64,000 nt of DNA from the NCBI RefSeq assembly GCF_001194135.2, contig NC_068987.1, positions 106,657,553 through 106,721,552 of the forward strand, written 5' to 3'. This DNA comes from Octopus bimaculoides (taxonomy: Eukaryota). Position numbers and translations under genes: made by a program. Of this stretch, positions 3,704-38,236 are shown piece by piece; the first letter of the stretch is position 1; every line of letters starts with the position of its first letter. The notes under the pieces are model-generated. The model had not been told where the DNA came from, did not search any database, and saw only the letters and a program-made list of their open reading frames with translations.

Positions 3704-5135
3704 NNNNNNNNNNNNNNNNNNNNNNNNNNNNNNNNNNNNNNNNNNNNNNNNNNNNNNNNNNNNNNNNNNNNNNNNNNNNNNNNNNNNNNNNNNNNNNNNN
3801 NNNNNNNNNNNNNNNNNNNNNNNNNNNNNNNNNNNNNNNNNNNNNNNNNNNNNNNNNNNNNNNNNNNNNNNNNNNNNNNNNNNNNNNNNNNNNNNNNNNN
3901 NNNNNNNNNNNNNNNNNNNNNNNNNNNNNNNNNNNNNNNNNNNNNNNNNNNNNNNNNNNNNNNNNNNNNNNNNNNNNNNNNNNNNNNNNNNNNNNNNNNN
4001 NNNNNNNNNNNNNNNNNNNNNNNNNNNNNNNNNNNNNNNNNNNNNNNNNNNNNNNNNNNNNNNNNNNNNNNNNNNNNNNNNNNNNNNNNNNNNNNNNNNN
4101 NNNNNNNNNNNNNNNNNNNNNNNNNNNNNNNNNNNNNNNNNNNNNNNNNNNNNNNNNNNNNNNNNNNNNNNNNNNNNNNNNNNNNNNNNNNNNNNNNNNN
4201 NNNNNNNNNNNNNNNNNNNNNNNNNNNNNNNNNNNNNNNNNNNNNNNNNNNNNNNNNNNNNNNNNNNNNNNNNNNNNNNNNNNNNNNNNNNNNNNNNNNN
4301 NNNNNNNNNNNNNNNNNNNNNNNNNNNNNNNNNNNNNNNNNNNNNNNNNNNNNNNNNNNNNNNNNNNNNNNNNNNNNNNNNNNNNNNNNNNNNNNNNNNN
4401 NNNNNNNNNNNNATACTACATATATACGTATGTATATGTATGTATATATGTACGTATGTGTATTCATGCCTAGTTACCCCATCTCTTGCTTCCTCTCTCT
4501 GTCTTTCTCTCTGCCTCTATCTTTGTCTTCTCTTTTGTTCCCCCCCCACATCTACCGCCCACCCGTCCATCTATGTTTTTCTGTATCTTTTATATATTTT
4601 TCCATCACAATAACACCACAGCCTGCTCTACCATTACTATTGACACACACCGTCCACTAACGACATCAAAGTACCTATTATTCTTGAAACGAACCCAATA
4701 AACAAAAAACACACAAACAAACATAAAAAAAAATCTAAACATACGTACGTCCAGCCATGACAGACATTAACACGCACACATACAAACACAAACATACACA
4801 TACACGCTCACACACACACACACACACGCATACACATGCAACCTTCGTACCTTAGACATTTGTATATTGATTGGTCTTGCCCCACACATCACAGTTCTTT
4901 TGTTGTTGATCTTATTGTTGCTGTTATTGTTAATATTATTAATATTATTGTTGTGGTTCTTCTTCTTATTGTTATTATTATTGTTCGCCGGGCTTGCGTC
5001 CGTCGTTATTAATCACACATCAGTCATCGGTGACGACCATGAATCTATTGTCTAAATTATTCTTCAATAATTCTACAATTCACAACCGAGTCTGAGGTCC
5101 CTACAGCAACAAGAATAATAACGCCACCCTTCACC

Positions 5136-5930: not shown

Positions 5931-6248
5931 TCACTGGCGGTGACGCGTGCCCATGGTCAACTTCATTATAAATATCATCATTAACATTGTCCTCATTAAT
6001 ATATGCATTTAGGGTTATCAGCGTGAACATATTTGTTGTTACCATGACCTTATGATGATGTAGGTTTTCATTGTTTCCTTAAAAGCCTGTTCTCGCTAAG
6101 CAGACGTGCATCCGGGCATATATGCTTTCTTTTCTTTCGAGCGTGTATTTACGAACTCATTGTAGAAAACAATATGGTAGACTATGATTAGCAGAATATT
6201 TAACTGCTTTTTCAATTATCTGTTGTTGCAGATGTGCATAATTTAGCG

Positions 6249-6412
6249 GGCGCAGGAGTGGCTGTGGGTAAGTAGCTTACTTACCGACCACATGGTTCCG
6301 GGTTCATTCCCACAGCGTGCCACCTCGGGCAAGTGTCTTCTACTATAGCATCGGGCCGATCAATGCCTTGTGAGAGAATTTGATAGACGGAAACTGAAGG
6401 GAGTCAGTCGTA
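6249..6412 (+). mobile_element. SINE-A 5' half (tRNA-like head plus core)
   Basis: GGCGCAGGAGTGGCTGTGGGTAAGTAGCTTACTTACC...GGGTTCATTCCC...GGGCAAGTGTCTTCTACTATAGC is colinear with 23351-23755 and 63246-63652. Confidence 0.9.
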
Positions 6413-6467
6413 AAGACAGACGAAATATTGCTAAGCATTTCGCCCGGCCTGCTAACCACTAGCCGCC
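6410..6467 (-). mobile_element. SINE-B head fragment fused tail-to-tail to SINE-A
   Basis: The minus strand reads GGCGGCTAGTGGTTAGCAGGCCGGGCGAAATGCTTAGCAATATTTCGTCTGTCTTTACG, matching the head of the copy at 19720. Confidence 0.8.
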
Positions 6468-6474
6468 TTTGTGT

Positions 6475-6643
6475 TTTCTTTTCTACTCTAGGAACAAGGC
6501 CCGAAATTATTGAGGAGATGGTCAGTCGGTTAGATTGACCCCAGTACGCAATTGGTGCTTAACTCATCGACCCCGAAAGGATGAAAGGCAAAGTTGACCA
6601 CGGAGGAATTTGAACTCAGAACGTAAAGACAGACGAAATACCG
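6475..6643 (-). mobile_element. SINE-B 3' portion (host of the LINE insertion)
   Basis: The minus strand starts CGGTATTTCGTCTGTCTTTACGTTCTGAGTTCAAATTCC (B box) and continues through the family body and tail. Confidence 0.9.
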
Positions 6644-8439
6644 ATTTCTTTATTAGCCATAAAGGGCTATACAAATAATTTTTAAGACATCACGAAACAT
6701 AAAGACAGTACAAAACGCAAACATAAAATCGAGGTAATTAAAATAAAATTATAATATGCAAGAATGAAAAAAAATGAGGCGCAATGTCCACTCGATCCCC
6801 GAAGTCGGGTGGTTACATTTATCCAGTTTTTCACTTTTACGTTCAACGTCATGTATACATTTTAACGGTTTTGCAACTCAAAAAATTGAAACACTCGCGT
6901 TATTTNNNNNNNNNNNNNNNNNNNNNNNNNNNNNNNNNNNNNNNNNNNNNNNNNNNNNNNNNNNNNNNNNNNNNNNNNNNNNNNNNNNNNNNNNNNNNNN
7001 NNNNNNNNNNNNNNNNNNNNNNNNNNNNNNNNNNNNNNNNNNNNNNNNNNNNNNNNNNNNNNNNNNNNNNNNNNNNNNNNNNNNNNNNNNNNNNNNNNNN
7101 NNNNNNNNNNNNNNNNNNNNNNNNNNNNNNNNNNNNNNNNNNNNNNNNNNNNNNNNNNNNNNNNNNNNNNNNNNNNNNNNNNNNNNNNNNNNNNNNNNNN
7201 NNNNNNNNNNNNNNNNNNNNNNNNNNNNNNNNNNNNNNNNNNNNNNNNNNNNNNAACCTCTCCACTTTTTTCTCCATCTCCTCGCAATTCTCGTACTTTA
7301 TCAAAGCCCCCTTATATTTCACATCTTTATCCGTTCTCTCCTCCTCTTCTTGTACATTATTAGTTTCTGGTTTTTCTATCTCTTTTTTTGTTTTGTTTTC
7401 TGTTGACCGTTCCTTTGACTTATTTTTCCTTCGCTTTTTAGGATTAGTAGCTCCATTTTCGTTCGTCTCCTTTGTTTTCTCTGTTTCACACTTCTCTCTC
7501 TCTTTCATTTCCTAAGTGTGGTCTACAATGTTTTCCTCCTCTGCTTGTGCTTTCTCTTGCTGTGGCTGTGTGAACTCATATAGGGGGCATTTGGTCTTCA
7601 TATGACCTCTTTCCCCGCATATGTAGCAATTTGGTTTCCTTCCCTCGACTACAACATTTAACGTTCTCTCATCCTCCACTTCTATCTGGTAGGGAATTCT
7701 TTCTATGTCCTCGAATGTGGCAAAAAGCCACATTTCGAGTCCAAATCCCCACCATTTGCGCACTTTTGATTTCGCCACTGGTCTCAATTCCGGCTGCTCC
7801 TTGGCTGCATCCAGCACTGTTGCAACCAACCACTCTGGTTTAATTTCTGGTGTAACTCTAGGAATACGTATTTTCACACGACTTCTTCCTCTATAACTTG
7901 GTAGCAATGCTATTTTTGCACTTCTTAAAATGTTGGTCGAATGCTTGGTTGCCTCTTCTATATTTTCGAACCTCAACTCTACCGTACCGAACTTTCTTCC
8001 TCTGTTGATGTACGTGGCTTCATTCACAATTTCACCCAGGCACTCCTCGATTTCCTCTTCGGTCACCATTTCAATTTTACAGGTTTCGACAGCCTGTGTA
8101 CGATACACAACTGTCCTCAGAATTTTGTTTTCTTTAATCACTTTTGGGGGGCAGAATTTGTATGACTCTCCATCAACTTTTATCAAATTCCTACTTCTGG
8201 TCACCTCCTCCATATCCAACTTGATTAACTTGGTTTCTAGCGGCACTGGCCTCCTCACCGCAGTGGCCTTGGCGAAGCACTCCATACTGGAGACACTACC
8301 ACTTGCCATAGCTGGGGGAAAATGCAGCAGCTCGCGTGAAACGTAACCGTAATAATTCCACAAAAATCACAATTATTCACTGAGACAGTTTTTCACAAAG
8401 TAACACAGCCGTATTCACAATAATTCACAGAGCCGTTAC
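6644..8439 (-). mobile_element. L1/Tx1-type non-LTR retrotransposon inserted in a SINE-B (349-N gap inside)
   Basis: About 130 nt of 5' UTR, a gag-like ORF1, an N gap, and a T-rich 3' UTR ending TAGCCCTTTATGGCTAATAAAGAAAT. Flanked by ACCG at 6640-6643 and 8440-8443 (CGGT on the element strand). Clade is inferred from ORF1 only. Confidence 0.8.
7255..8309 (-). CDS. Gag-like ORF1 with a CCHC zinc knuckle; one in-frame TAG at 7512-7514, then a K/E-rich continuation into the gap
   Basis: Likely start MASGSVSS at 8309. Motif VVVEGRKPNCYICGERGHMKTKCP fits CX2CX4HX4C. Track ORF 6900..7508 is in the same frame, one codon after the stop. Confidence 0.8.
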
Positions 8440-8492
8440 ACCGCTAAGCATTCCGCCCGGCGTGCTAACATTTCTGCCAGCTCACCGCCTTA
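8440..8492 (-). mobile_element. SINE-B 5' head (host of the LINE insertion)
   Basis: The minus strand reads TAAGGCGGTGAGCTGGCAGAAATGTTAGCACGCCGGGCGGAATGCTTAGCGGT; joined to 6643 with one CGGT removed it restores a SINE-B. Confidence 0.9.
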
Positions 8493-8589
8493 ACATTACA
8501 CACGATATTAGCATCTCTACCCGTTAACAGATTACCAGGCGTTTCTTGGATATTCGTAGACATACTTTGAATTTACAGCTATAATCCAT

Positions 8590-8730
8590 GCGACAGGTTT
8601 CCTCACCATTTCTGCCTACTTAATTTAATTCATTCTAACTCAAGCCAATTTGTAGAATGTACTTTTCGACGGTGCCATGCCTAAGGAGAAAATCCAAAAC
8701 ATTTTGATTGAGAAGCGAATTCCCACAATG
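8590..8730 (-). mobile_element. Highly decayed SINE-A 5' half
   Basis: Weak colinear similarity to the SINE-A head and core (TGTGGGAATTCGCTTCTCAATC...GCATGGCACC...GGTGAGGAAAC). Confidence 0.4.
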
Positions 8731-9176
8731 TATATATATGTATATATATATGTATATATATGTATTCGGATAACGCTGACCGCTAATCCGACTCACCATA
8801 ACTCCCAACACATTCATCTTTCTCAGCGTCTTCGTCATCCTCATAGTCGTCGTCATCAACATTATATTCATCATGATCATGAAAGTAATCATCATCGTTA
8901 GCGACTCCGTCACCACCACAACCACCACCACTAATATCTTCATCAGCAAAACCAGCCGCAGCAGCCTCATCGTCGGCCTCATCAGTATCATCATCATTGC
9001 AGTCACGGTCGTCGACATTTTTACTAAAATATCAAATGTATTAAACCCACCAGACCGCAATGATCGCCAGTTAGAAAAAAAAGAAGAAAATAATAAACTA
9101 TAATGAATATAATAAATATAACTAAAAGAATGAACAAATAAAGTGTTTGTTTTTATTGCTACGGTTGTTGTTGCTT

Positions 9177-9177
9177 C

Positions 9178-9241
<64 letters not shown>

Positions 9242-9248
9242 GTTATTA

Positions 9249-9327
<79 letters not shown>

Positions 9328-9330
9328 TGC
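9177..9330. repeat. (ATT)n microsatellite
   Basis: Direct. Confidence 0.95.
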
Positions 9331-10503
9331 TACTACTACGACCGCTGTGGCTGTTTGATTAGTCTGTGGTGGGTCGCTACATGCACTGCAGTACAGTTGC
9401 AGTTGAATAATGAAGCGTGAAGCTGTGACTCCCTCACATCTGATCTGTGAAACTGAAACAGTTCAAAATGAGGAAAGAAGAAAGAAGGAAATACAAAAAA
9501 TATATAATAAATAATATAAAAAGAAGGAAAAAAAGAGAGGGAGAGAAAGAGATAGAGAATGAGTGATGCAGGGAAAGTGAGACAGAAAAAGAACATTAAA
9601 ATGTCAAAAGTCAAAAATAACGAACAGAATTTTAATTACGTCCTGCTGGCTTTCATTATTTAATTAATCATCTATTCGGGCACCCTCCTTCTATCATTTT
9701 CTGGAACTATCATTATTTTTTCTTTTTTTTTTTGGCCAAAACTAATAAAAATATAGGACGAAGAAAAAATTAACCGGAGGAGATAAAATTTGTAATGAGA
9801 TAACTTCGCTATGTGCCGTATGAAGTGAATCTTTGGAGAAAAAACAGAAATATTTAGGGAGGCTGTAAATGAAGATGAGTATATTCTTAAAAGAGTGTGA
9901 AACATAGTAAACTCCGGTAAGATCATGGTCACAGCTAGTTTATATATTTCAGAATGGGCCTGTATACGATAAAAAAAAATACAGTTGATTAGGGAGAAAT
10001 CAATTAAAATGCTGTAGAGTAATTATATTATATTAAATAGATATTATAAAATAATTTTTTGTTCAGCGTAATAGGAATGTCCTTTCGATTAAATGAAGGG
10101 TATCTGAGTAGACGGAAAATGAAGATGGCCCTGCATGATGGAAAATATATTTTGAAAAAGAAATGTTCGTGTAAAATGGCATTAAGGCGCGTTCTGGACA
10201 TATTTTGAAGTATTGAAGCGTGAAGGTGCGCACTAATCATAAACTGAATTTCGCAAAGCAAAATATTTTAAAATGTATGTCGTAAGAAATGGTATATCGT
10301 GTATACATCAGATACCCACGTTAGAATTCAAAGCTTATTTCAGAAAGTCCCTTCAGGACACAACAGTGCGAAGTGTTTTAAGGCTTGCATTGAGAATCTA
10401 ATGTATTTAATTATGAGGGTTCAAACCCGACGCTTTCTGTGCATTCAAGGAATGTTGCAAGATCGTGAATTTTGTAGCCATTCGTATACTAAATTACACA
10501 AGC

Positions 10504-10544
<41 letters not shown>

Positions 10545-11309
10545 CACACACACATATACATATATGTGTGTTGTGTGTGTGTGTTTGCGAGTACATGTAT
10601 GCATATTTATGTGTATGAAATATACATAAATGTATATTTTATAAATATGTTATTTGATTGGGATACGAAGTGACATAACCAAAACTATAAATATTAATTA
10701 TGAATTATATATACAAAAAGCAAATGGTAATCAACCTTTTAACCCCCCAAAAAACATGCAAAATTTATGCACGGAATTCAGTGCATACTTCGGTAAATCG
10801 CAAATACGTTAGACCGCCATAATTTCCGCTATCTTTCACCTTCAAAGGCTTAGATTATTTAACCAACGTACCTTGTAGTTTAGCTCGAGATCTCATTGAA
10901 CATAATATCATGAATAATGAATCCTTCCTCACTTCACTCAGTGTCATTACAGAGTGTATCCGTCTCTATAATACGTGACACACATGTGTCCATGCATGTC
11001 TGTGTGTGTGTGTGTATGTGTTTGTATCTGATCATTGAGGTAATTTTTAGACATGTTGCATAAATTAATAAATGGTTCTAACATAGTAATGAGGAGAGTA
11101 GTCGAGCAGAGCGACTAGTAATAAACTTTGAACTGAACCCGAGGCAATGGCTAGAGGATTTGACATTAGCGCGTTTCGAACTGAGAAAGAAAACAGCTTG
11201 CACAAATACCGGAATATGTTAGGCTTGCTTATGATCTTGTCAATTCGTTGCCTCTGTTTATATATATATATGTGTGTGTGTGTGTATATATATATCTAAA
11301 TATATATCT

Positions 11310-11342
<33 letters not shown>

Positions 11343-12149
11343 AATATGTATATATGTATATGTATATATNNNNNNNNNNNNNNNNNNNNNNNNNNNNNNN
11401 NNNNNNNNNNNNNNNNNNNNNNNNNNNNNNNNNNNNNNNNNNNNNNNNNNNNNNNNNNNNNNNNNNNNNNNNNNNNNNNNNNNNNNNNNNNNNNNNNNNN
11501 NNNNNNNNNNNNNNNNNNNNNNNNNNNNNNNNNNNNNNNNNNNNNNNNNNNNNNNNNNNNNNNNNNNNNNNNNNNNNNNNNNNNNNNNNNNNNNNNNNNN
11601 NNNNNNNNNNNNNNNNNNNNNNNNNNNNNNNNNNNNNNNNNNNNNNNNNNNNNNNNNNNNNNNNNNNNNNNNNNNNNNNNNNNNNNNNNNNNNNNNNNNN
11701 NNNNNNNNNNNNNNNNNNNNNNNNNNNNNNNNNNNNNNNNNNNNNNNNNNNNNNNNNNNNNNNNNNNNNNNNNNNNNNNNNNNNNNNNNNNNNNNNNNNN
11801 NNNNNNNNNNNNNNNNNNNNNNNNNNNNNNNNNNNNNNNNNNNNNNNNNNNNNNNNNNNNNNNNNNNNNNNNNNNNNNNNNNNNNNNNNNNNNNNNNNNN
11901 NNNNNNNNNNNNNNNNNNNNNNNNNNNNNNNNNNNNNNNNNNNNNNNNNNNNNNNNNNNNNNNNNNNNNNNNNNNNNNNNNNNNNNNNNNNNNNNNNNNN
12001 NNNNNNNNNNNNNNNNNNNNNNNNNNNNNNNNNNNNNNNNNNNNNNNNNNNNNNNNNNNNNNNNNNNNNNNNNNNNNNNNNNNNNNNNNNNNNNNNNNNN
12101 NNNNNNGTATATACACATATGTATATATACATATACATATATACATATT

Positions 12150-12182
<33 letters not shown>

Positions 12183-12309
12183 AGATATATATTTAGATAT
12201 ATATATACACACACACACATACACACACACACACACACATAGATATATATATATATACACATGCATACACAAATATATAACTATGTGCGTCTGTGTGTGT
12301 ATGTATATA

Positions 12310-12507
12310 TACGAGAAGGTCTATGAAAAGGTACAAGAATGTGGTACAAGATATCTGATGAAGGTAAACGTCTTCAAGGCTCAAATGTTTTCATACACCC
12401 CTCGTATATATACGAGAAGGTCTATGAAAAGGTACAAAAATATGGTACAAGATATCTGATGAAGGTAAACGTCTTCAAGGCTCAAATGTTTTCATACACC
12501 CCTCGTA
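12310..12507. mobile_element. Tandem dimer of a 93-bp mariner-like MITE
   Basis: Units 12312-12404 and 12413-12505 each have imperfect TIRs CGAGAAGGTCTATGAAAA / TTTTCATACACCCCTCG, are flanked by TA and are separated by TATATATA. Confidence 0.7.
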
Positions 12508-12540
12508 AGTCCAAATAAACATACACATATACACGTATAT

Positions 12541-12830
12541 GGAGGCGCAGACGTGGTTGTGTGGTAAGAAGCAAGCTTCCCAACTCTGTGGCTCCGGGTT
12601 CAGTTCAACCACGAAGCACCTTGAGCAAGTGTCTTGTATTATAGCCACGGGGTTACCAAAGACTTATGAATGAATTTGGTAGACGGAAACTGAAAGAAGC
12701 TATCGTATGTGTGTGTGTGTGTGTGTATTTGTCGCTCGCCGCCGGTTGACAACCGATGTTGTATATTTATGTTCCTGTAGCTCGGTAAAGAAACCGATAG
12801 GATAAGTACTAGCCTCAAAAAAGGAGTTCC
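12541..12830 (+). mobile_element. SINE-A, diverged, with internal (TG)n
   Basis: Head, core, (TG)n and 3' domain (TTGACAACCGATG...GATAAGTACTAG) occur in family order. Confidence 0.85.
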
Positions 12831-12922
12831 ATGCTCGATTTCTTCGACGAAAAATCATTGTAAGTCTACTACACCTTATAGCAGAAACATAAGATAATAA
12901 TTTCTTACTCTGTCCTCTCTCC

Positions 12923-13011
<89 letters not shown>

Positions 13012-13102
13012 NNNNNNNNNNNNNNNNNNNNNNNNNNNNNNNNNNNNNNNNNNNNNNNNNNNNNNNNNNNNNNNNNNNNNNNNNNNNNNNNNNNNNNNNN
13101 NN

Positions 13103-13150
<48 letters not shown>

Positions 13151-14012
13151 TATGAAACATGCAACGCACATAGATATCCACCACACCTCCCATTTTGTCT
13201 AAACATTGAAAAGTAAAAAAAAACAGAAGCGTATGAAATAGTATTTCATAATACAATGTAATAGAAATTCCATTGATTTGAGACCACCAACAGAGAGTAT
13301 CTGGATTGTGTTATTGGCAGATGCAATCATTGAAATGAAAATATGTAGACGTTGTTGTGGTTGTCATGTTGTTGATACTTGTCTTGAAAGCATGGCATGT
13401 ATGTATATATATATATCATTGGATGTAAGAGGGTTGTATGTGATGACAATGTTGAGGCTGAAAATGATTATATTTATTGTGTTTTTGGTAGCTACAATTG
13501 TAAGTTTAATAAAAAGACATGGCTGTCTTGTTCTTGTTCTGTTGTTGTTATTGTTGTTGGTATTAAGATGGCGGATTTGATGTCATTATGGGTGGCAATA
13601 GAAAAGAAGACGATATGAGATTATAATTAGCAATACTGCTCTTGATATGTTTTCAATGTTAGTGCTGTAGCTGTTAGCAAATCTGAAGTCACAAATGTGG
13701 AGTTGCAATGATGAAACGTGTTTGTTCCTTTTGTTGTTGTTGCTGCTGTTATTGTTGGTGATAATGATGATGATGACTAGAAGGTGGAGGGAAGGAGGTG
13801 GAGTAGGGGGTGGAGGAGGAGGAAGAAGAAGAGGAAGACGAATAGGATTAGGATTATGATTCTAATCATATTTATCTTATGGTGAATCTTAATCTAGCAT
13901 AGTCTCTCATCAAACGTGTTCCGAACATGACCATCACGTATTTTATTCAACCACAATTTATTTAAGACTCCGTTATCCTTCTTTTCCTCAAACGTTTGTT
14001 CTGTGTTTTCAG

Positions 14013-17399: not shown

Positions 17400-18630
17400 A
17401 CAGAAAAACCAAAAGAAAAACGAATCGAAATGATACATGGAAATCGACCCCAGGGGAACCAGACAAAAGTATCAGACTTCTAATTGTCCAAATATGTGCG
17501 GAGATGAACTCAAAATCATCCCAAATGCACACTGGGAATCTGTATGCTCCAATGTCAAAATATAACTTTACTCTTAAAGAACACAACAAGTATAGAAGAC
17601 AACTATCAATATGTGATCCCAAATACCCTAGATGCATAAATGCATAGGGAGAAAGACAAAGAAGTAAAAGGGGAATAAAGAAGTCATAATGCAAATGGAC
17701 TTCGTGGAAGCTTAAGATACCCACTATTAGCGACCCTCGATGCCAAATATCCCGGATTTCCAAACAAGCATACAAGAAGATGGAAAGAAGACAGACCCTG
17801 TATGCGACGTATTTCAGACTTGAAATATTCTCTCAGAGAGACAATATTACAACTCTGTTTGATTTGAGGGAAAAGACAAACGGGCCCCAGATTCGACAGG
17901 ACATGAAATGTAAGTATACCCACAGAAAATATATGCCATAGAATTATAAATTTAGCGAAAAGAAACTGAAAAAAGATGAAATGATTCTTTTATTGGAAGG
18001 TTTCAAATTAACCCCTACACTTAAATCTTATCGCATAGAACTAAAAGCCGCTATTGAACATTTTAGTCGACACTTCCGCCTTCTACAATTCTTTGGCAAG
18101 CAGAACGTAAATGACGAGTGAATCATCAGAAATAAATCCTACCTCACTCCTATCCGGATGAGTGACAAACATCTTGATACATATATAGACACGATTTCCA
18201 AATTTTCTCTTAGTCCCTTGAAATGCAAGCGAAACATCCGTAAAGAGGAAAAGGAAGGTTTACTAACTTTGAAGAACGACAACCCAATCATCCTAAAAGA
18301 AAGTGATAAGCGGAGAGCGATAGTGATTAAGGACAGGTACCATTATATAGACAAAATATTAGAACAGCTAACAATCCTAAACTACTATAGGGAAGAAGCA
18401 AGATTCTAGAACAATCAATAATGAAAAAAAAAATCTGAACATTATTTAACCAACGCCCAGATGAAGAAATAGATTACTTGTGTAACTCCGAAATTAAAGA
18501 GAGCGTTTCTATGGATTACTCAATGTCCACAAAAGCTCGGAAATAGAGAAAGCTATAAGTGAACAGAAGAACAAATACATAAAGATATTAAGACCCACTG
18601 ATCTTAAACCGAGACTAATAATTGCAGAAC
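17400..18630 (+). mobile_element. Penelope-like element, N-terminal RT region, decayed and 3'-truncated
   Basis: From about 17940: NLSEKKLKKDEMILLLEGFKLTPT...LKNDNPIILKESDKRRAIVIKDR...FYGLLNVHKS...DLKPRLII, the PLE KGLKFxPTP / ADKG / FYGLPKIHK motif series. 17400-17940 is assumed continuous. Confidence 0.8.
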
Positions 18631-19510: not shown

Positions 19511-19719
19511 GGGTAAATACATTTGATGAGCAAAAATGAATATGATCAGATATACTAGGGTTACTCTAAAGGAAGACTCTTTATAAAAACAACTCTTCAT
19601 ATGCTAGCAAATGAGTTTTGCATAGGATTGGGTTGTTTCGCTGAGTGACCTCCCCATAATATATTCAATTAGAAACAACTGGCATTGCTGTAAGACAGTA
19701 ACAAGCAGAAATGTTAGTT

Positions 19720-19954
19720 AAGGCGGCGAGCTGGCAGAATCGTTAGCACGCCGGGCGAAATGCTTAGCAGTATTTCGTCTGCCGCTACATTTTGAGTTAA
19801 AATTCCGCCGAGGTCGATTTTGCCTTTCATCATTTTGGGGGGTCGATTAAATAAGTACCAGTTACACACTGTGGTCGATACAAGCGACTTAATCCGTTTG
19901 CCTGTCCTTGTTTGTCCGCTCTGTGTGTAGCGCCTTGTGGGCAGTAAAGAAATA
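19720..19954 (+). mobile_element. Full SINE-B with LINE-like 3' tail and 13-bp TSD
   Basis: TSD AGAAATGTTAGTT at 19707-19719 and 19955-19967; A box TGGCAGAATCG; B box GAGTTAAAATTCC; tail TGTGTAGCGCCTTGTGGGCAGTAAAGAAAT. Confidence 0.9.
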
Positions 19955-20887
19955 AGAAATGTTAGTTTGTCAAGACAAAATAACTGATGGCTTTTAGTGA
20001 CAGCCTTTTAATTTAATTTTCCCAAGGTTATCTTTCTTTAATTATTCTGGTGTCGTTAAAATAGAGTACCACTTAAATAATATCCTCGATTTTATCTGTT
20101 ACTTCCCTCCTTCAAATTGCGTCTTTTTCTAAAATTAAGCTAGCATGGCAATGAATTATTTTAAGGTGGTATGCAAAGAGAAACTTGTTGGAGTACCAGA
20201 GATAATAACCTGTGGTAGTCATGGTTATTTAAGTAATGGGTTCAAATCCTGTCGAACAAAACTCTGATTTCATTCGTTCGAGGTTCATAAGTATATTTTC
20301 CCTAATTTTTGGCTTTGTGCATATTTAGCAACAAATATCTAAGAGTTATTCTCTATTATAGCTGTAACAATGAAATATCTGGAGAGATTTACATGGAAGT
20401 CATCCTAGACATTGATAGAATTCAATAACATTAAAGCAACTTGATATTTCCTCCCTTGTCTGTACCTTAATGCCACATGTCGATATCTTTGAATAATGGC
20501 TTTAGGTAATTTCATTGAGAAGTCAGTAAGTTTCTAAACCGACTCAGCTTCTTTCTACCATAAGAAATTATAATCACTGGTGGTGCTTCATCAATTATTT
20601 ATCATTATTGTCACTGTTGTCATGAAAAATGACGCTGGGGTGTTGGCTTCTTCGTGTGTGAATGTTTGAACGCCGGATAACAGTTTCTATGCTAACGCTC
20701 AATAGAAGTATCTTCACTTTGCGAGGTCAAGTTTTAAGACACATGGAGGTTATTTGGAATATCACAAGTTGTTCGGATTAAGTTCGAATTGTGGTGACAT
20801 GTACATACATACATGCATGCATACATACACATATATATAGAGAGAGATACATACACACACAGACACACAAGCACATATAATTATATG

Positions 20888-37350: not shown

Positions 37351-38236
37351 CTCGCTTCTACACTATGCATACATAAAGAAGTACCAAACTATCGCACAGA
37401 GACTGCCAACATATACAAATATACATACATGTATGTGTGTGCGAGGCGCGCGCATGTATCCATAAATATACACGCACATGTATACGCACATACGCATATA
37501 CATNNNNNNNNNNNNNNNNNNNNNNNNNNNNNNNNNNNNNNNNNNNNNNNNNNNNNNNNNNNNNNNNNNNNNNNNNNNNNNNNNNNNNNNNNNNNNNNNN
37601 NNNNNNNNNNNNNNNNNNNNNNNNNNNNNNNNNNNNNNNNNNNNNNNNNNNNNNNNNNNNNNNNNNNNNNNNNNNNNNNNNNNNNNNNNNNNNNNNNNNN
37701 NNNNNNNNNNNNNNNNNNNNNNNNNNNNNNNNNNNNNNNNNNNNNNNNNNNNNNNNNNNNNNNNNNNNNNNNNNNNNNNNNNNNNNNNNNNNNNNNNNNN
37801 NNNNNNNNNNNNNNNNNNNNNNNNNNNNNNNNNNNNNNNNNNNNNNNNNNNNNNNNNNNNNNNNNNNNNNNNNNNNNNNNNNNNNNNNNNNNNNNNNNNN
37901 NNNNNNNNNNNNNNNNNNNNNNNNNNNNNNNNNNNNNNNNNNNNNNNNNNNNNNNNNNNNNNNNNNNNNNNNNNNNNNNNNNNNNNNNNNNNNNNNNNNN
38001 NNNNNNNNNNNNNNNNNNNNNNNNNNNNNNNNNNNNNNNNNNNNNNNNNNNNNNNNNNNNNNNNNNNNNNNNNNNNNNNNNNNNNNNNNNNNNNNNNNNN
38101 NNNNNNNNNNNNNNNNNNNNNNNNNNNNNNNNNNNNNNNNNNNNNNNNNNNNNNNNNNNNNNNNNNNNNNNNNNNNNNNNNNNNNNNNNNNNNNNNNNNN
38201 NNNNNNNNNNNNNNNNNNNNNNNNNNNNNNNNNNNN

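What the first reader, a model, noticed from the sequence alone, without database searches (positions are those of the whole stretch)
19707..19967. SINE-B subfamily carries the 3' end of the LINE that inserts into SINE-B
Seen: 19924-19953 (TGTGTAGCGCCTTGTGGGCAGTAAAGAAAT) matches the LINE's last 30 nt (6673-6644, TGTATAGCCCTTTATGGCTAATAAAGAAAT) at 23/30 without gaps. Other SINE-B copies (49790, 53222, 53455, 45760) end in a different AAATTTGAAA.CAAT tail. This copy has a clean 13-bp TSD, and its site GAAATGTTAG resembles the GAAATGCTTAG just 5' of the LINE junction. Established: SINEs are mobilised through shared LINE 3' ends. Inference: a tail swap coupled this SINE to a LINE that targets it, predicting SINE-in-SINE nests at CGGT.
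Basis: partly seen in the sequence, partly recalled or inferred. Interest (0 to 1): 0.75.

Follow-up and report, generated by a model that had tools for sequence, protein, structure and literature searches.

The report
Octopus SINE borrowing a SINE-targeting LINE tail
A short octopus retroposon (SINE) copy ends in the 42-base tail of an L1/Tx1-like LINE lineage, and elements with this tail insert mostly into the 5' head of that same SINE family, a new twist on known SINE-LINE partnerships.

Summary
Window 19720-19954 (Octopus bimaculoides) is a full-length SINE-B copy with a perfect 13-bp target duplication. Its tail matches the 3' end of the insert at 6644-8439 at 23/30.

Two corrections apply.
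- That insert is not an autonomous LINE. It is a ~1.65-kb ORF1-only (CCHC) element with no reverse transcriptase.
- The SINE tail matches better (~90% over 42 nt) the 3' end of reverse-transcriptase-bearing L1/Tx1-like LINE copies found in an O. vulgaris locus.

The tail class is not unique. I found seven independent SINE copies in two species, within 118 kb of octopus DNA.

Elements with this tail cluster in the SINE-B head.
- No clear SINE copy does. Three of six SINE copies, including the window copy, sit at another head site, GGC^AGAAAYGTTAG.
- The window copy is itself nested in an ancient, decayed SINE-B.

The idea of a tail swap onto a SINE-targeting LINE is therefore supported.

The sample is small and genome-wide counts are needed. 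This is a new variant of known systems: shared SINE/LINE tails and Tx1-type LINEs that target other transposons.

The parts
19707..19719 (+). 5' copy of the 13-bp target-site duplication AGAAATGTTAGTT. It corresponds to positions 17-29 of the head of an older SINE-B.
   Evidence: With the two preceding bases, the 13-mer GCAGAAATGTTAG is identical to the SINE-B head at window 8477-8465.
19720..19891 (+). Head and body of the SINE-B copy (SINE-B model positions 1-170).
   Evidence: nhmmer with a SINE-B profile, E=2.9e-53. blastn against other copies.
19892..19912 (+). Linker specific to this tail subfamily. It is shared with the other tail-class SINE copies but not clearly with the LINE.
   Evidence: Alignment A1. 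Local alignments start at 19913.
19913..19954 (+). LINE-derived 3' module of about 42 nt. A stem-loop (19930-19933 paired with 19939-19942) is followed by AGTAAAGAAATA.
   Evidence: with about 90% identity to the O. vulgaris RT-LINE tail. RNAalifold predicts the hairpin and 92% of cells are paired.
19955..19967 (+). 3' copy of the target-site duplication.
19691..19706 (+). Presumed positions 1-16 of the ancient, decayed SINE-B that was the target. This is inferred from collinearity only, because the sequence is too decayed to score.
   Evidence: (empty-site reconstruction), by inference.
19968..20091 (+). Remainder of the ancient target SINE-B. 20022-20091 matches SINE-B core positions 89-159.
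   Evidence: nhmmer on the rejoined flanks, E=5e-4. The match is collinear, within 5 nt, with the duplication placed at head position 17.
6644..8439 (-). It is an ORF1-only non-autonomous retroposon with a 5' UTR, a CCHC ORF, a 3' UTR and a tail. The assembly gap at 6906-7254 stands for about 200 bp.
   Evidence: An ungapped paralogue at L003 9590-10936 shows there is no ORF2. The O. vulgaris homologue also lacks ORF2.
7512..8309 (-). ORF1-like reading frame with a zinc knuckle (CYICGERGHMKTKC). It ends at a TAG that paralogues read as Glu and continue past.
   Evidence: Pfam zf-CCHC, E=8.6e-5. Paralogues P0001 and P0003-P0006.
6644..6691 (-). 3' module of the ORF1-only element, a diverged version of the same tail.
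   Evidence: nhmmer, E=1.9e-8 and 3.3e-10.
8440..8491 (-). Head (positions 1-52) of the SINE-B interrupted by the ORF1-only element. It ends in CGGT (8443-8440).
6475..6643 (-). Rest of that SINE-B, from CGGT (6643-6640) to its type-2 tail TAGAGTAGAAAAGA.

Best explanation
Window 19720-19954 is a member of a subfamily of the abundant octopus SINE-B. I call it the tail-3 class.

Its last ~42 nt are a short G:C stem-loop followed by A(A/G)TAAAGAAAT(A). This is the 3' recognition module of an L1/Tx1-like LINE lineage, which has a reverse transcriptase plus a C-terminal zf-RVT domain. A ~1.65-kb ORF1-only derivative, the insert at 6644-8439, carries a diverged copy of the same module.

The SINE and the ORF1-only element are most likely copied in trans by that LINE's reverse transcriptase. 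The enzyme would recognise the shared tail and start target-primed reverse transcription there (inferred).

Insertions of all three element types concentrate in the first ~55 nt of SINE-B.
- LINE-type copies sit between model positions 48 and 49 (TTAG^CGGT). This lies in the loop of a CGAAAT...ATTTCG inverted repeat, and the duplication is 4 bp or longer.
- Tail-3 SINE copies sit between positions 16 and 17 (GGC^AGAAAYGTTAG).

The window copy itself sits at position 16/17 of an ancient SINE-B. It is therefore a SINE-in-SINE nest, but not at CGGT.

Shown: the tail homology, the multiple copies in two species, the junction positions and the target duplications. Inferred: trans-mobilisation, the basis of site choice in the endonuclease or RNA, and a tail swap by recombination or template switching.
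For: Organism: Octopus bimaculoides.

Tail homology:
- 23/30 identity to the ORF1-only element.
- About 90% identity over 42 nt to the RT-bearing LINE tails L001 9403-9450 and 13490-13537.
- A profile built from LINE-type tails only finds every tail-3 SINE at E=2.5e-11 to 7e-7 and nothing else.

Identity of the LINE:
- RVT_1 at E=5e-28 and zf-RVT at E=1.5e-9.
- The best solved relative is human L1 ORF2p at E=2e-23, against R2 at 1e-16.
- Non-octopus relatives carry an APE endonuclease, RT and zf-RVT.
- One of them ends in a stem-loop plus GAATAAAGAAC.

Copies of the tail-3 class: window 19720; L003 9537-9590 plus 10937-11113; L003 36356-36124; L001 13538-13707; the L001 17465-18318 array; L001 18481-18640. 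Pairwise identity is 86-95%, including between species.

Site 48/49. Junctions of the form tail|CGGTATTTCG occur at window 6644, L003 10936, L001 13537 and L001 about 18650. The two ORF1-only copies have both flanks and lie in SINEs of different tail classes, so they are independent events. P is about 1e-13.

Site 16/17:
- Junctions tail|AGAAAYGTTAG occur at window 19954, L003 11113 and L003 36124.
- The window empty site matches the SINE-B core collinearly.
- The L003 11113 insertion has the target head upstream, with a 39-bp duplication of positions 17-55.
- P is about 6e-12.

Precedent: Tx1 LINEs target other transposons, and SINEs they mobilise share that target preference (PMC4494074). 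SINE/LINE tail homologies of 35-61 bp at 72-95% identity are reported in molluscs (PMC11481361).
Against: - Only 118 kb of octopus DNA could be examined, and two of the three loci were fetched because they carry an ORF1-only element.
- Counts are small: 7 LINE-type tails and 6 SINE tails.
- No intact, full-length octopus LINE of this lineage was seen. Both RT copies are 5'-truncated, decayed and only 73-74% alike. The endonuclease and ORF1 of the true partner are therefore inferred from non-octopus relatives.
- Elements with one shared tail use two different junction positions, which a single endonuclease specificity does not explain.
- The three O. vulgaris tail-3 SINE copies are not at position 16/17.
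- Hairpin covariation is not significant: one compensatory pair, matched or exceeded by 77 of 500 shuffles.
- Clade assignment (Tx1 versus L1) was not tested by phylogeny.
Confidence: 0.7

Rival explanations
1. The insert at 6644-8439 is the autonomous LINE that donated the tail, and tail-class SINE copies therefore nest at the CGGT site.
For: - 23/30 tail identity.
- The insert is at CGGT with a 4-bp duplication.
- One 18-nt tail fragment with the SINE-type AGT variant sits at GGTATTTCG in L001 at about 18650.
- One O. vulgaris tail-3 SINE has a duplication that starts with GGTAT.
Against: - The insert has no reverse transcriptase, and the ungapped paralogues show there is no room for one.
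- The SINE tail is closer to the RT-LINE tails: E=2e-9 to 2e-5, against 7e-5 to 0.1 for the ORF1-only tails under the RT-LINE profile.
- None of six full tail-3 SINE copies is followed by GGTATTTCGTC.
Confidence: 0.08
2. The junctions are not independent site-specific insertions. Composite units, such as a LINE tail plus SINE 49-235 or a tail-3 SINE plus SINE-B 17-end, arose once. They then spread by 3' transduction, tandem duplication or recombination in a SINE-dense genome.
For: - L001 holds a head-to-tail chain running LINE, ORF1-only, LINE, SINE(49-235), with no SINE head upstream.
- L001 holds a 225-bp tandem array of SINE(50-235) units.
- L003 36124 has no separate target head upstream.
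Against: - The window and L003 ORF1-only copies have both SINE flanks with a CGGT/TGGT duplication, in SINEs of different tail classes.
- The window SINE has a clean 13-bp duplication in a decayed target.
- The SINE-B parts downstream of the two L003 nests are 87% alike, no more than random SINE-B pairs at 82-92%.
Confidence: 0.12
3. The direction is reversed. The module originated in the SINE and was later captured by the LINE-type elements.
For: The tail-3 SINE copies are less diverged from one another (86-95%) than the two RT-LINE copies are (73-74%).
Against: - A related LINE in a non-octopus organism, with about 50% amino-acid identity in the RT and no SINE-B nearby, also ends in a stem-loop plus AATAAAGAA.
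- Three different LINE-type families carry the module.
- In established cases SINE tails derive from LINE 3' UTRs (PMC11481361).
Confidence: 0.07
4. The 23/30 resemblance is chance between two AT-rich ends.
For: blastn at E<=1 did not report the pair. The last 9 nt are low in complexity.
Against: Anchored P=1e-8. No shuffle reached the observed score. An independent profile gives E=3e-7. The match recurs in 13 tails from two species.
Confidence: 0.02

Closest known systems
Tx1-clade LINEs that target other transposons, with SINEs that share their target (Tx1L into Tx1D; Tx1-Mar and SINEU into Mariner-N4_AMi; Kojima 2015, PMC4494074)
   Same: - An L1-superfamily LINE inserts at one position of another repeat family.
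- Non-autonomous elements mobilised by it share the target preference.
- Copies pile up in tandem at the target.
- The share of flanks in the same target exceeds Kojima's 20% criterion (4 of 7 here).
   Different: - The target here is the head of a SINE, not a DNA transposon or an snRNA gene.
- The dependent SINE belongs to the very family that is targeted.
- SINE and LINE-type copies use two different positions in the target.
- Membership of the Tx1 clade was not tested by phylogeny.
Stringent SINE/LINE pairs with a shared 3' stem-loop tail (eel UnaSINE1/UnaL2, Kajikawa and Okada 2002) and mosaic tail exchange in SINE superfamilies (CORE-SINEs; bivalve HCD-SINEs, PMC11481361)
   Same: - One SINE body carries three alternative tails.
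- The shared segment of 42 nt at about 90% identity lies within the reported range of 35-61 bp at 72-95%.
- The shared module consists of a stem-loop followed by a short conserved end.
   Different: - The partner here is L1/Tx1-like, not L2, CR1 or RTE.
- The end is a fixed AATAAAGAAAT containing a poly(A)-signal hexamer, rather than a short tandem repeat.
- Recognition of the tail by the reverse transcriptase is untested.
HAL1 (half-L1), the ORF1-only derivatives of mammalian L1 (from my own knowledge; mentioned in PMC5753468)
   Same: The insert at 6644-8439 encodes only an ORF1-like protein and carries the LINE-type 3' end. It exists as a multi-copy family in two species.
   Different: - It has a CCHC-knuckle ORF1 and no poly(A) tail.
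- It inserts site-specifically.
- Its parent LINE's ORF1 and 5' end were not recovered, so its derivation is inferred.

Membership tests
SINE with a LINE-derived 3' tail | The 3' end is homologous to the 3' end of a LINE in the same genus. | tested here: met
   42 nt at about 90% identity to RT-bearing LINE copies. A LINE-only profile gives E=3e-7 to 2.5e-11.
SINE with a LINE-derived 3' tail | Short, multi-copy, flanked by target-site duplications. | tested here: met
   235 bp with a 13-bp duplication. Seven independent tail-class copies in 118 kb.
SINE with a LINE-derived 3' tail | Head derived from a small RNA, with an internal Pol III promoter. | tested here: inconclusive
   ARAGORN calls no tRNA in any copy. 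A box-B-like GAGTTCAAATTCC is visible by eye. tRNA origin of octopus SINEs rests on the literature only (cited).
SINE with a LINE-derived 3' tail | Mobilised in trans by the partner LINE. | not testable with these tools
   Needs a retrotransposition assay.
L1/Tx1-type target-specific LINE | ORF2 with an APE endonuclease, a reverse transcriptase and a C-terminal zinc-binding domain. | tested here: inconclusive
   RVT_1 and zf-RVT are present in L001. The octopus copies are 5'-truncated before the endonuclease. APE was seen only in non-octopus relatives.
L1/Tx1-type target-specific LINE | The RT groups with the Tx1 clade in a phylogeny. | not testable with these tools
   No reference set of LINE clades was available. 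The only result is L1 ORF2p ranking above R2 among solved structures.
L1/Tx1-type target-specific LINE | More than 20% of copies are flanked by the same target sequence (criterion in PMC4494074). | tested here: met
   4 of 7 LINE-type tails are followed by CGGTATTTCG of SINE-B. The sample is small.
HAL1-like ORF1-only derivative | Encodes ORF1 but no ORF2 and keeps the LINE's 3' end. | tested here: met
HAL1-like ORF1-only derivative | ORF1 and the 5' end derive from the parent LINE. | not tested
   No full-length parent LINE was recovered. Another ORF1 homologue with 33% identity lies at L001 4064-4699.
CORE-SINE superfamily | Central domain homologous to the CORE domain. | tested here: inconclusive
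The literature says tRNA-Core SINEs dominate in octopus, but this family was not identified there.

The most novel reading that the evidence does not exclude
Site choice may be guided by the RNA rather than fixed by the endonuclease.

The module ends only 5 nt after its AAUAAA hexamer, and SINE transcripts run on to the next T-run. Transcripts therefore carry some of the downstream target sequence. That read-through could base-pair with the same site in other SINE-B copies and home the element there.

This would explain why SINE copies, whose masters sit at position 16/17, and LINE-type copies, whose masters sit at 48/49, keep different sites while sharing one tail. The most abundant octopus SINE would then serve as both parasite of and landing pad for one LINE lineage.
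Probability: 0.2. Interest if true: 0.7.

Novelty: new variant of a known kind. Interest (0 to 1): 0.5.

Why it matters
SINEs make up roughly a tenth or more of Octopus genomes, and their LINE partners are largely undescribed.

This finding identifies one partnership, an L1/Tx1-like LINE with a SINE-B subfamily. It also shows that the partner and its dependants land mainly inside SINE-B heads.

That has three consequences:
- New copies go into already inert DNA, a safe-haven strategy.
- It produces nested and tandem SINE clusters.
- It inactivates target copies by splitting their promoter region.

It also gives repeat annotators a concrete rule, breakpoints at model positions 16/17 and 48/49, for untangling octopus SINE nests.

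I found no description of this in the literature searched.

Tried and rejected
No reads could be laid and read laying was not used.
- Look-ups of P0006 and P0001 found no gene on record. P0130, taken from the cluster list, worked.
- The RT query found no close octopus proteins; the best hit had 59% identity.
- Loci L002, L004, L005 and L006, fetched from those hits, are not Octopus. They contain no SINE-B and no tail.
- Two metagenome scans, one for the tail and one for the SINE-B core, found nothing.
- The AlphaFold model of ORF1 had mean pLDDT 36.7 and was not searched further.
- Pfam found no RRM domain in ORF1.
- Using antisense SINE ORFs as protein queries was considered and dropped, because the consensus has stop codons in that frame.
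- TAAAGAAAT alone is not specific: two of its four window hits are chance matches.
Full report
**Source and material.** The window is from Octopus bimaculoides. A gene model of that species is 100% identical to an ORF in the window. Only two further octopus loci could be fetched:
- L001, 20.6 kb of O. vulgaris OX597820.1.
- L003, 41.9 kb of the O. bimaculoides chromosome assembly CM046603.1.

Together with the window this gives 118 kb of non-gap octopus DNA. They are therefore not random with respect to that element. The junctions and the SINE copies in them were not selected for.

- Its last 30 nt match the last 30 nt of the insert at 6644-8439 (minus strand) at 23/30 without gaps. As an end-anchored comparison this has P about 1e-8. 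No shuffle out of 500 reached the local alignment score. blastn at E<=1 did not report the pair.
- Other SINE-B copies in the window end in two other tails...GCCAAAATTTGAAACCAAT and ...GCCTAGAGTAGAAAAGA.
- The insert at 6644-8439 splits a SINE-B. The head is at 8491-8440 and the rest at 6643-6475, with CGGT on both sides.

**What the 'LINE' is.**
- The insert has a defined 5' end (GTAACGGCTCTG...) and one ORF with a CCHC zinc knuckle (Pfam E=8.6e-5). A 3' UTR follows, ending in ...TATGGCTAATAAAGAAAT.
- The 349-N assembly gap could in principle have hidden an ORF2. A 91-95% identical paralogue without a gap (L003 9590-10936) shows that the gap stands for about 200 bp. The O. vulgaris homologue (L001 9451-10927) also has no ORF2.
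- It is therefore a ~1.65-kb ORF1-only, non-autonomous element, comparable to mammalian HAL1.
- In the window copy the ORF ends at a TAG that paralogues read through.
- An AlphaFold model of the protein was too poor to use, with pLDDT 36.7.

**The real LINE.**
- L001 holds two 5'-truncated, decayed copies of a LINE on the plus strand, at about 7285-9450 and about 10928-13537. They carry RVT_1 (E=5e-28) and the C-terminal zf-RVT domain (E=1.5e-9).
- The closest solved relative is human L1 ORF2p (E=2e-23), ahead of R2 proteins at 1e-16.
- Non-octopus relatives with about 50% identity have an APE endonuclease, RT and zf-RVT.
- L1-Tx1 is the only L1-like group listed among the LINE groups in a recent O. 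vulgaris annotation (PMC13282606). I call the lineage L1/Tx1-like. The clade was not tested by phylogeny.
- Both copies end in ...GTCCCC(C)TCTATGTTTGGCCCCTTGTGGGCAATAAAGAAAT(A).

**The tail is a shared module.**
- The last ~42 nt are shared by three groups: the tail-3 SINE copies, the two RT-bearing LINE copies, and three ORF1-only type elements (alignments A1 and A2).
- A profile built from the LINE-type tails alone finds every tail-3 SINE tail at E=2.5e-11 to 7e-7, with the window copy at 3.3e-7. It finds nothing else in 126 kb.
- A profile built from the two RT-LINE tails alone scores the SINE tails (E=2e-9 to 2e-5) above the ORF1-only tails (7e-5 to 0.1).
- This lies within the 35-61 bp and 72-95% range reported for mollusc SINE/LINE pairs (PMC11481361).
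- RNAalifold predicts a 4-bp stem (GCCC/GGGC) with a 5-nt loop just before AATAAAGAAAT. Of all cells, 92% pair, against 50% or less when the partner is slid. There is only one compensatory change, and 77 of 500 shuffles do as well. The hairpin is conserved, but covariation does not prove it.
- A related LINE from an unidentified non-octopus organism (L004) ends in a different stem-loop followed by GAATAAAGAAC. This favours a LINE origin of the module.

**The tail class is not unique to this copy.** Tail-3 SINE copies are at:
- window 19720-19954
- L003 9537-9590 plus 10937-11113
- L003 36356-36124
- L001 13538-13707
- a four-unit tandem array at L001 17465-18318
- L001 18481-18640

Pairwise identity is 86-95%, and it is as high between species as within them. 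The subfamily was therefore active around or before the split of the two species.

The O. bimaculoides ORF1-only copies are 91-95% alike and are inserted into SINEs, so they are younger. The two RT-LINE copies are only 73-74% alike.

I numbered SINE-B on a consensus built from eight full copies. In that numbering CGGT is positions 49-52. It lies in the 10-nt loop of an inverted repeat, CGAAAT (37-42) with ATTTCG (53-58).

The junction tail|CGGTATTTCG occurs four times:
- at the window ORF1-only element (6644)
- at the L003 ORF1-only element (10936)
- at the second RT-LINE copy, as tail|TCGTATTTCG (L001 13537)
- at an 18-nt tail fragment, as tail|GGTATTTCG (L001 about 18650)

A fifth tail (L001 17454) lies about 12 nt upstream of that point.

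The two ORF1-only copies have the SINE head on the other side and a CGGT/TGGT duplication. One is in a type-2-tailed SINE and the other in a tail-3 SINE, so they are independent events.

With about 20 recognisable sites in 118 kb, four of seven LINE-type tails at this point has P about 1e-13. In the SINE-B map, nine hits (six independent) start at model positions 47-51. Every one of them abuts a tail or a LINE end.

**Where tailed elements land: the SINE copies.** None of the six full tail-3 SINE copies is followed by GGTATTTCGTC. All three O. bimaculoides copies are followed by AGAAAYGTTAG.

- In L003 11113 and L003 36124 this sequence is the head of another SINE-B, continuing from position 17.
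- For L003 11113 the target's own head (positions 1-55) lies upstream. That gives a 39-bp duplication of positions 17-55.
- For the window copy I rejoined the two flanks. The 13-bp duplication plus the two bases before it gives GCAGAAATGTTAG, identical to the SINE-B head at window 8477-8465. In addition, 20022-20091 matches SINE-B core positions 89-159 (E=5e-4) at the expected distance.

The window copy is therefore itself nested in an ancient, decayed SINE-B at position 16/17. Three of six copies at this exact position has P about 6e-12.

The parts of SINE-B downstream of the two L003 nests are no more alike (87%) than random SINE-B pairs (82-92%). The nests are therefore not copies of one dimer.

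It points to the wrong place, however, because the target corresponds to head positions 17-27.

The three O. vulgaris tail-3 SINE copies are elsewhere. One of them has a 15-bp duplication GGTATACTTGTAGGA, which begins like the CGGT site.

**Mechanism.** The most likely reading has four parts.
- The L1/Tx1-like LINE's reverse transcriptase recognises the stem-loop plus AAUAAAGAAAU module. It starts target-primed reverse transcription on its own RNA, on the ORF1-only element's RNA and on the tail-3 SINE's RNA.
- First-strand nicks fall preferentially at two points of the SINE-B head.
- Second-strand nicks vary, giving duplications of 4, 13, about 23 and 39 bp.
- The SINE subfamily arose when a SINE-B acquired the LINE's last ~65 nt. 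This could have happened by recombination, by template switching, or by insertion of a very short 5'-truncated LINE copy near SINE-B position 170.

This matches known behaviour. Tx1 LINEs target other transposons, and SINEs mobilised by them share the target preference and pile up in tandem (PMC4494074). Trans-mobilisation and the basis of site choice are inferred, not shown.

The split between SINE copies (16/17) and LINE-type copies (48/49) is unexplained. Fisher's test gives p=0.029 on seven events. One possibility is homing guided by read-through transcripts that carry downstream target sequence. I give that a probability of 0.2.

**Rivals.**
- Chance similarity is excluded.
- Spread of composite units by transduction or duplication may explain some L001 structures: the head-to-tail chain at 7285-13707 and the tandem array. 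It does not explain the junctions that have both flanks and their own duplications.
- Capture of a SINE tail by the LINEs is unlikely, given the non-octopus relative.
The element lacks a reverse transcriptase, and the SINE copies are absent from the CGGT site.

**Comparison and novelty.** Shared SINE/LINE tails, tail exchange within a SINE family, ORF1-only LINE derivatives, and Tx1-type LINEs that target other repeats are all known.

The new element here is the combination. The target is the head of the genome's major SINE family. A subfamily of that same SINE has taken the LINE's tail, so SINE copies insert into SINE copies.

I found no description of this in the papers searched, but Repbase could not be consulted. 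I rate it a new variant of a known kind, with interest 0.5. The evidence comes from 118 kb only, and a whole-genome count would settle it.

Noticed in passing
L001 7285-13707: A head-to-tail chain of four tail-bearing elements: RT-LINE, ORF1-only element, RT-LINE and SINE positions 49-235. Each is 5'-truncated and starts right after the previous tail. This could be serial insertion at one regenerated site or template jumping within one event.
   Followed up: partly
L001 7167-7290: The 5' end of the first LINE copy in that chain abuts an antisense SINE-B broken at about position 53. This is the same hairpin loop, but in the opposite orientation.
   Followed up: no
L001 17465-18318: Four tandem units of about 225 bp, each made of SINE positions 50-235 with the tail plus an AT-rich spacer. 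The array lies directly downstream of a third ORF1-like element whose tail ends at 17454.
   Followed up: partly
L001 18481-18737 (minus strand): A tail-3 SINE carrying an 18-nt tail fragment (GTGGTTAGTGAAGAAATA) at the CGGT site, with a duplication of about 23 bp of SINE positions 50-72. The whole element has a 15-bp duplication GGTATACTTGTAGGA.
   Followed up: partly
window 7512-7514 (minus strand): The ORF1 of the window copy stops at a TAG where paralogues (P0001, P0003-P0006) have Glu and continue for about 100 more residues. The window copy is probably a pseudogene.
   Followed up: partly
window 6300-6457 (minus strand): A second SINE type shares the SINE-B head up to about position 70. 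It then continues with a different body (...GAAGACACTTGCCCGAGGTGGCACGC...). The same body follows the tail-3 SINE at L001 13708.
   Followed up: no
window 52460-53071 and 59584-60265 (minus strand): ORFs with no Pfam hit. Their only distant database relatives carry RVT_1 and, in one case, a GIY-YIG domain, which suggests Penelope-like element remnants.
   Followed up: partly
L004 about 6200-6290 and about 13160-13250: In an unidentified non-octopus assembly (ENA ERZ21867824), two copies of a related APE+RT LINE end in a stem-loop with a T-run loop of 7 or 22 nt, followed by GAATAAAGAACTCAGGAGCCAA. The architecture of the end resembles the octopus module.
   Followed up: partly
L001 4004-4918: Another ORF1 homologue with 33% identity to the window ORF1. 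It is followed by a repetitive Lys/Thr-rich coding region and has no tail of this type, so it is probably a different LINE family.
   Followed up: no
window, 16 gaps (for example 3704-4412, 11370-12106, 37504-38236): The window has 5,418 N in 16 assembly gaps and many microsatellites. The gap at 6906-7254 overstates the missing sequence by about 150 bp, judged from the ungapped paralogue.
   Followed up: partly
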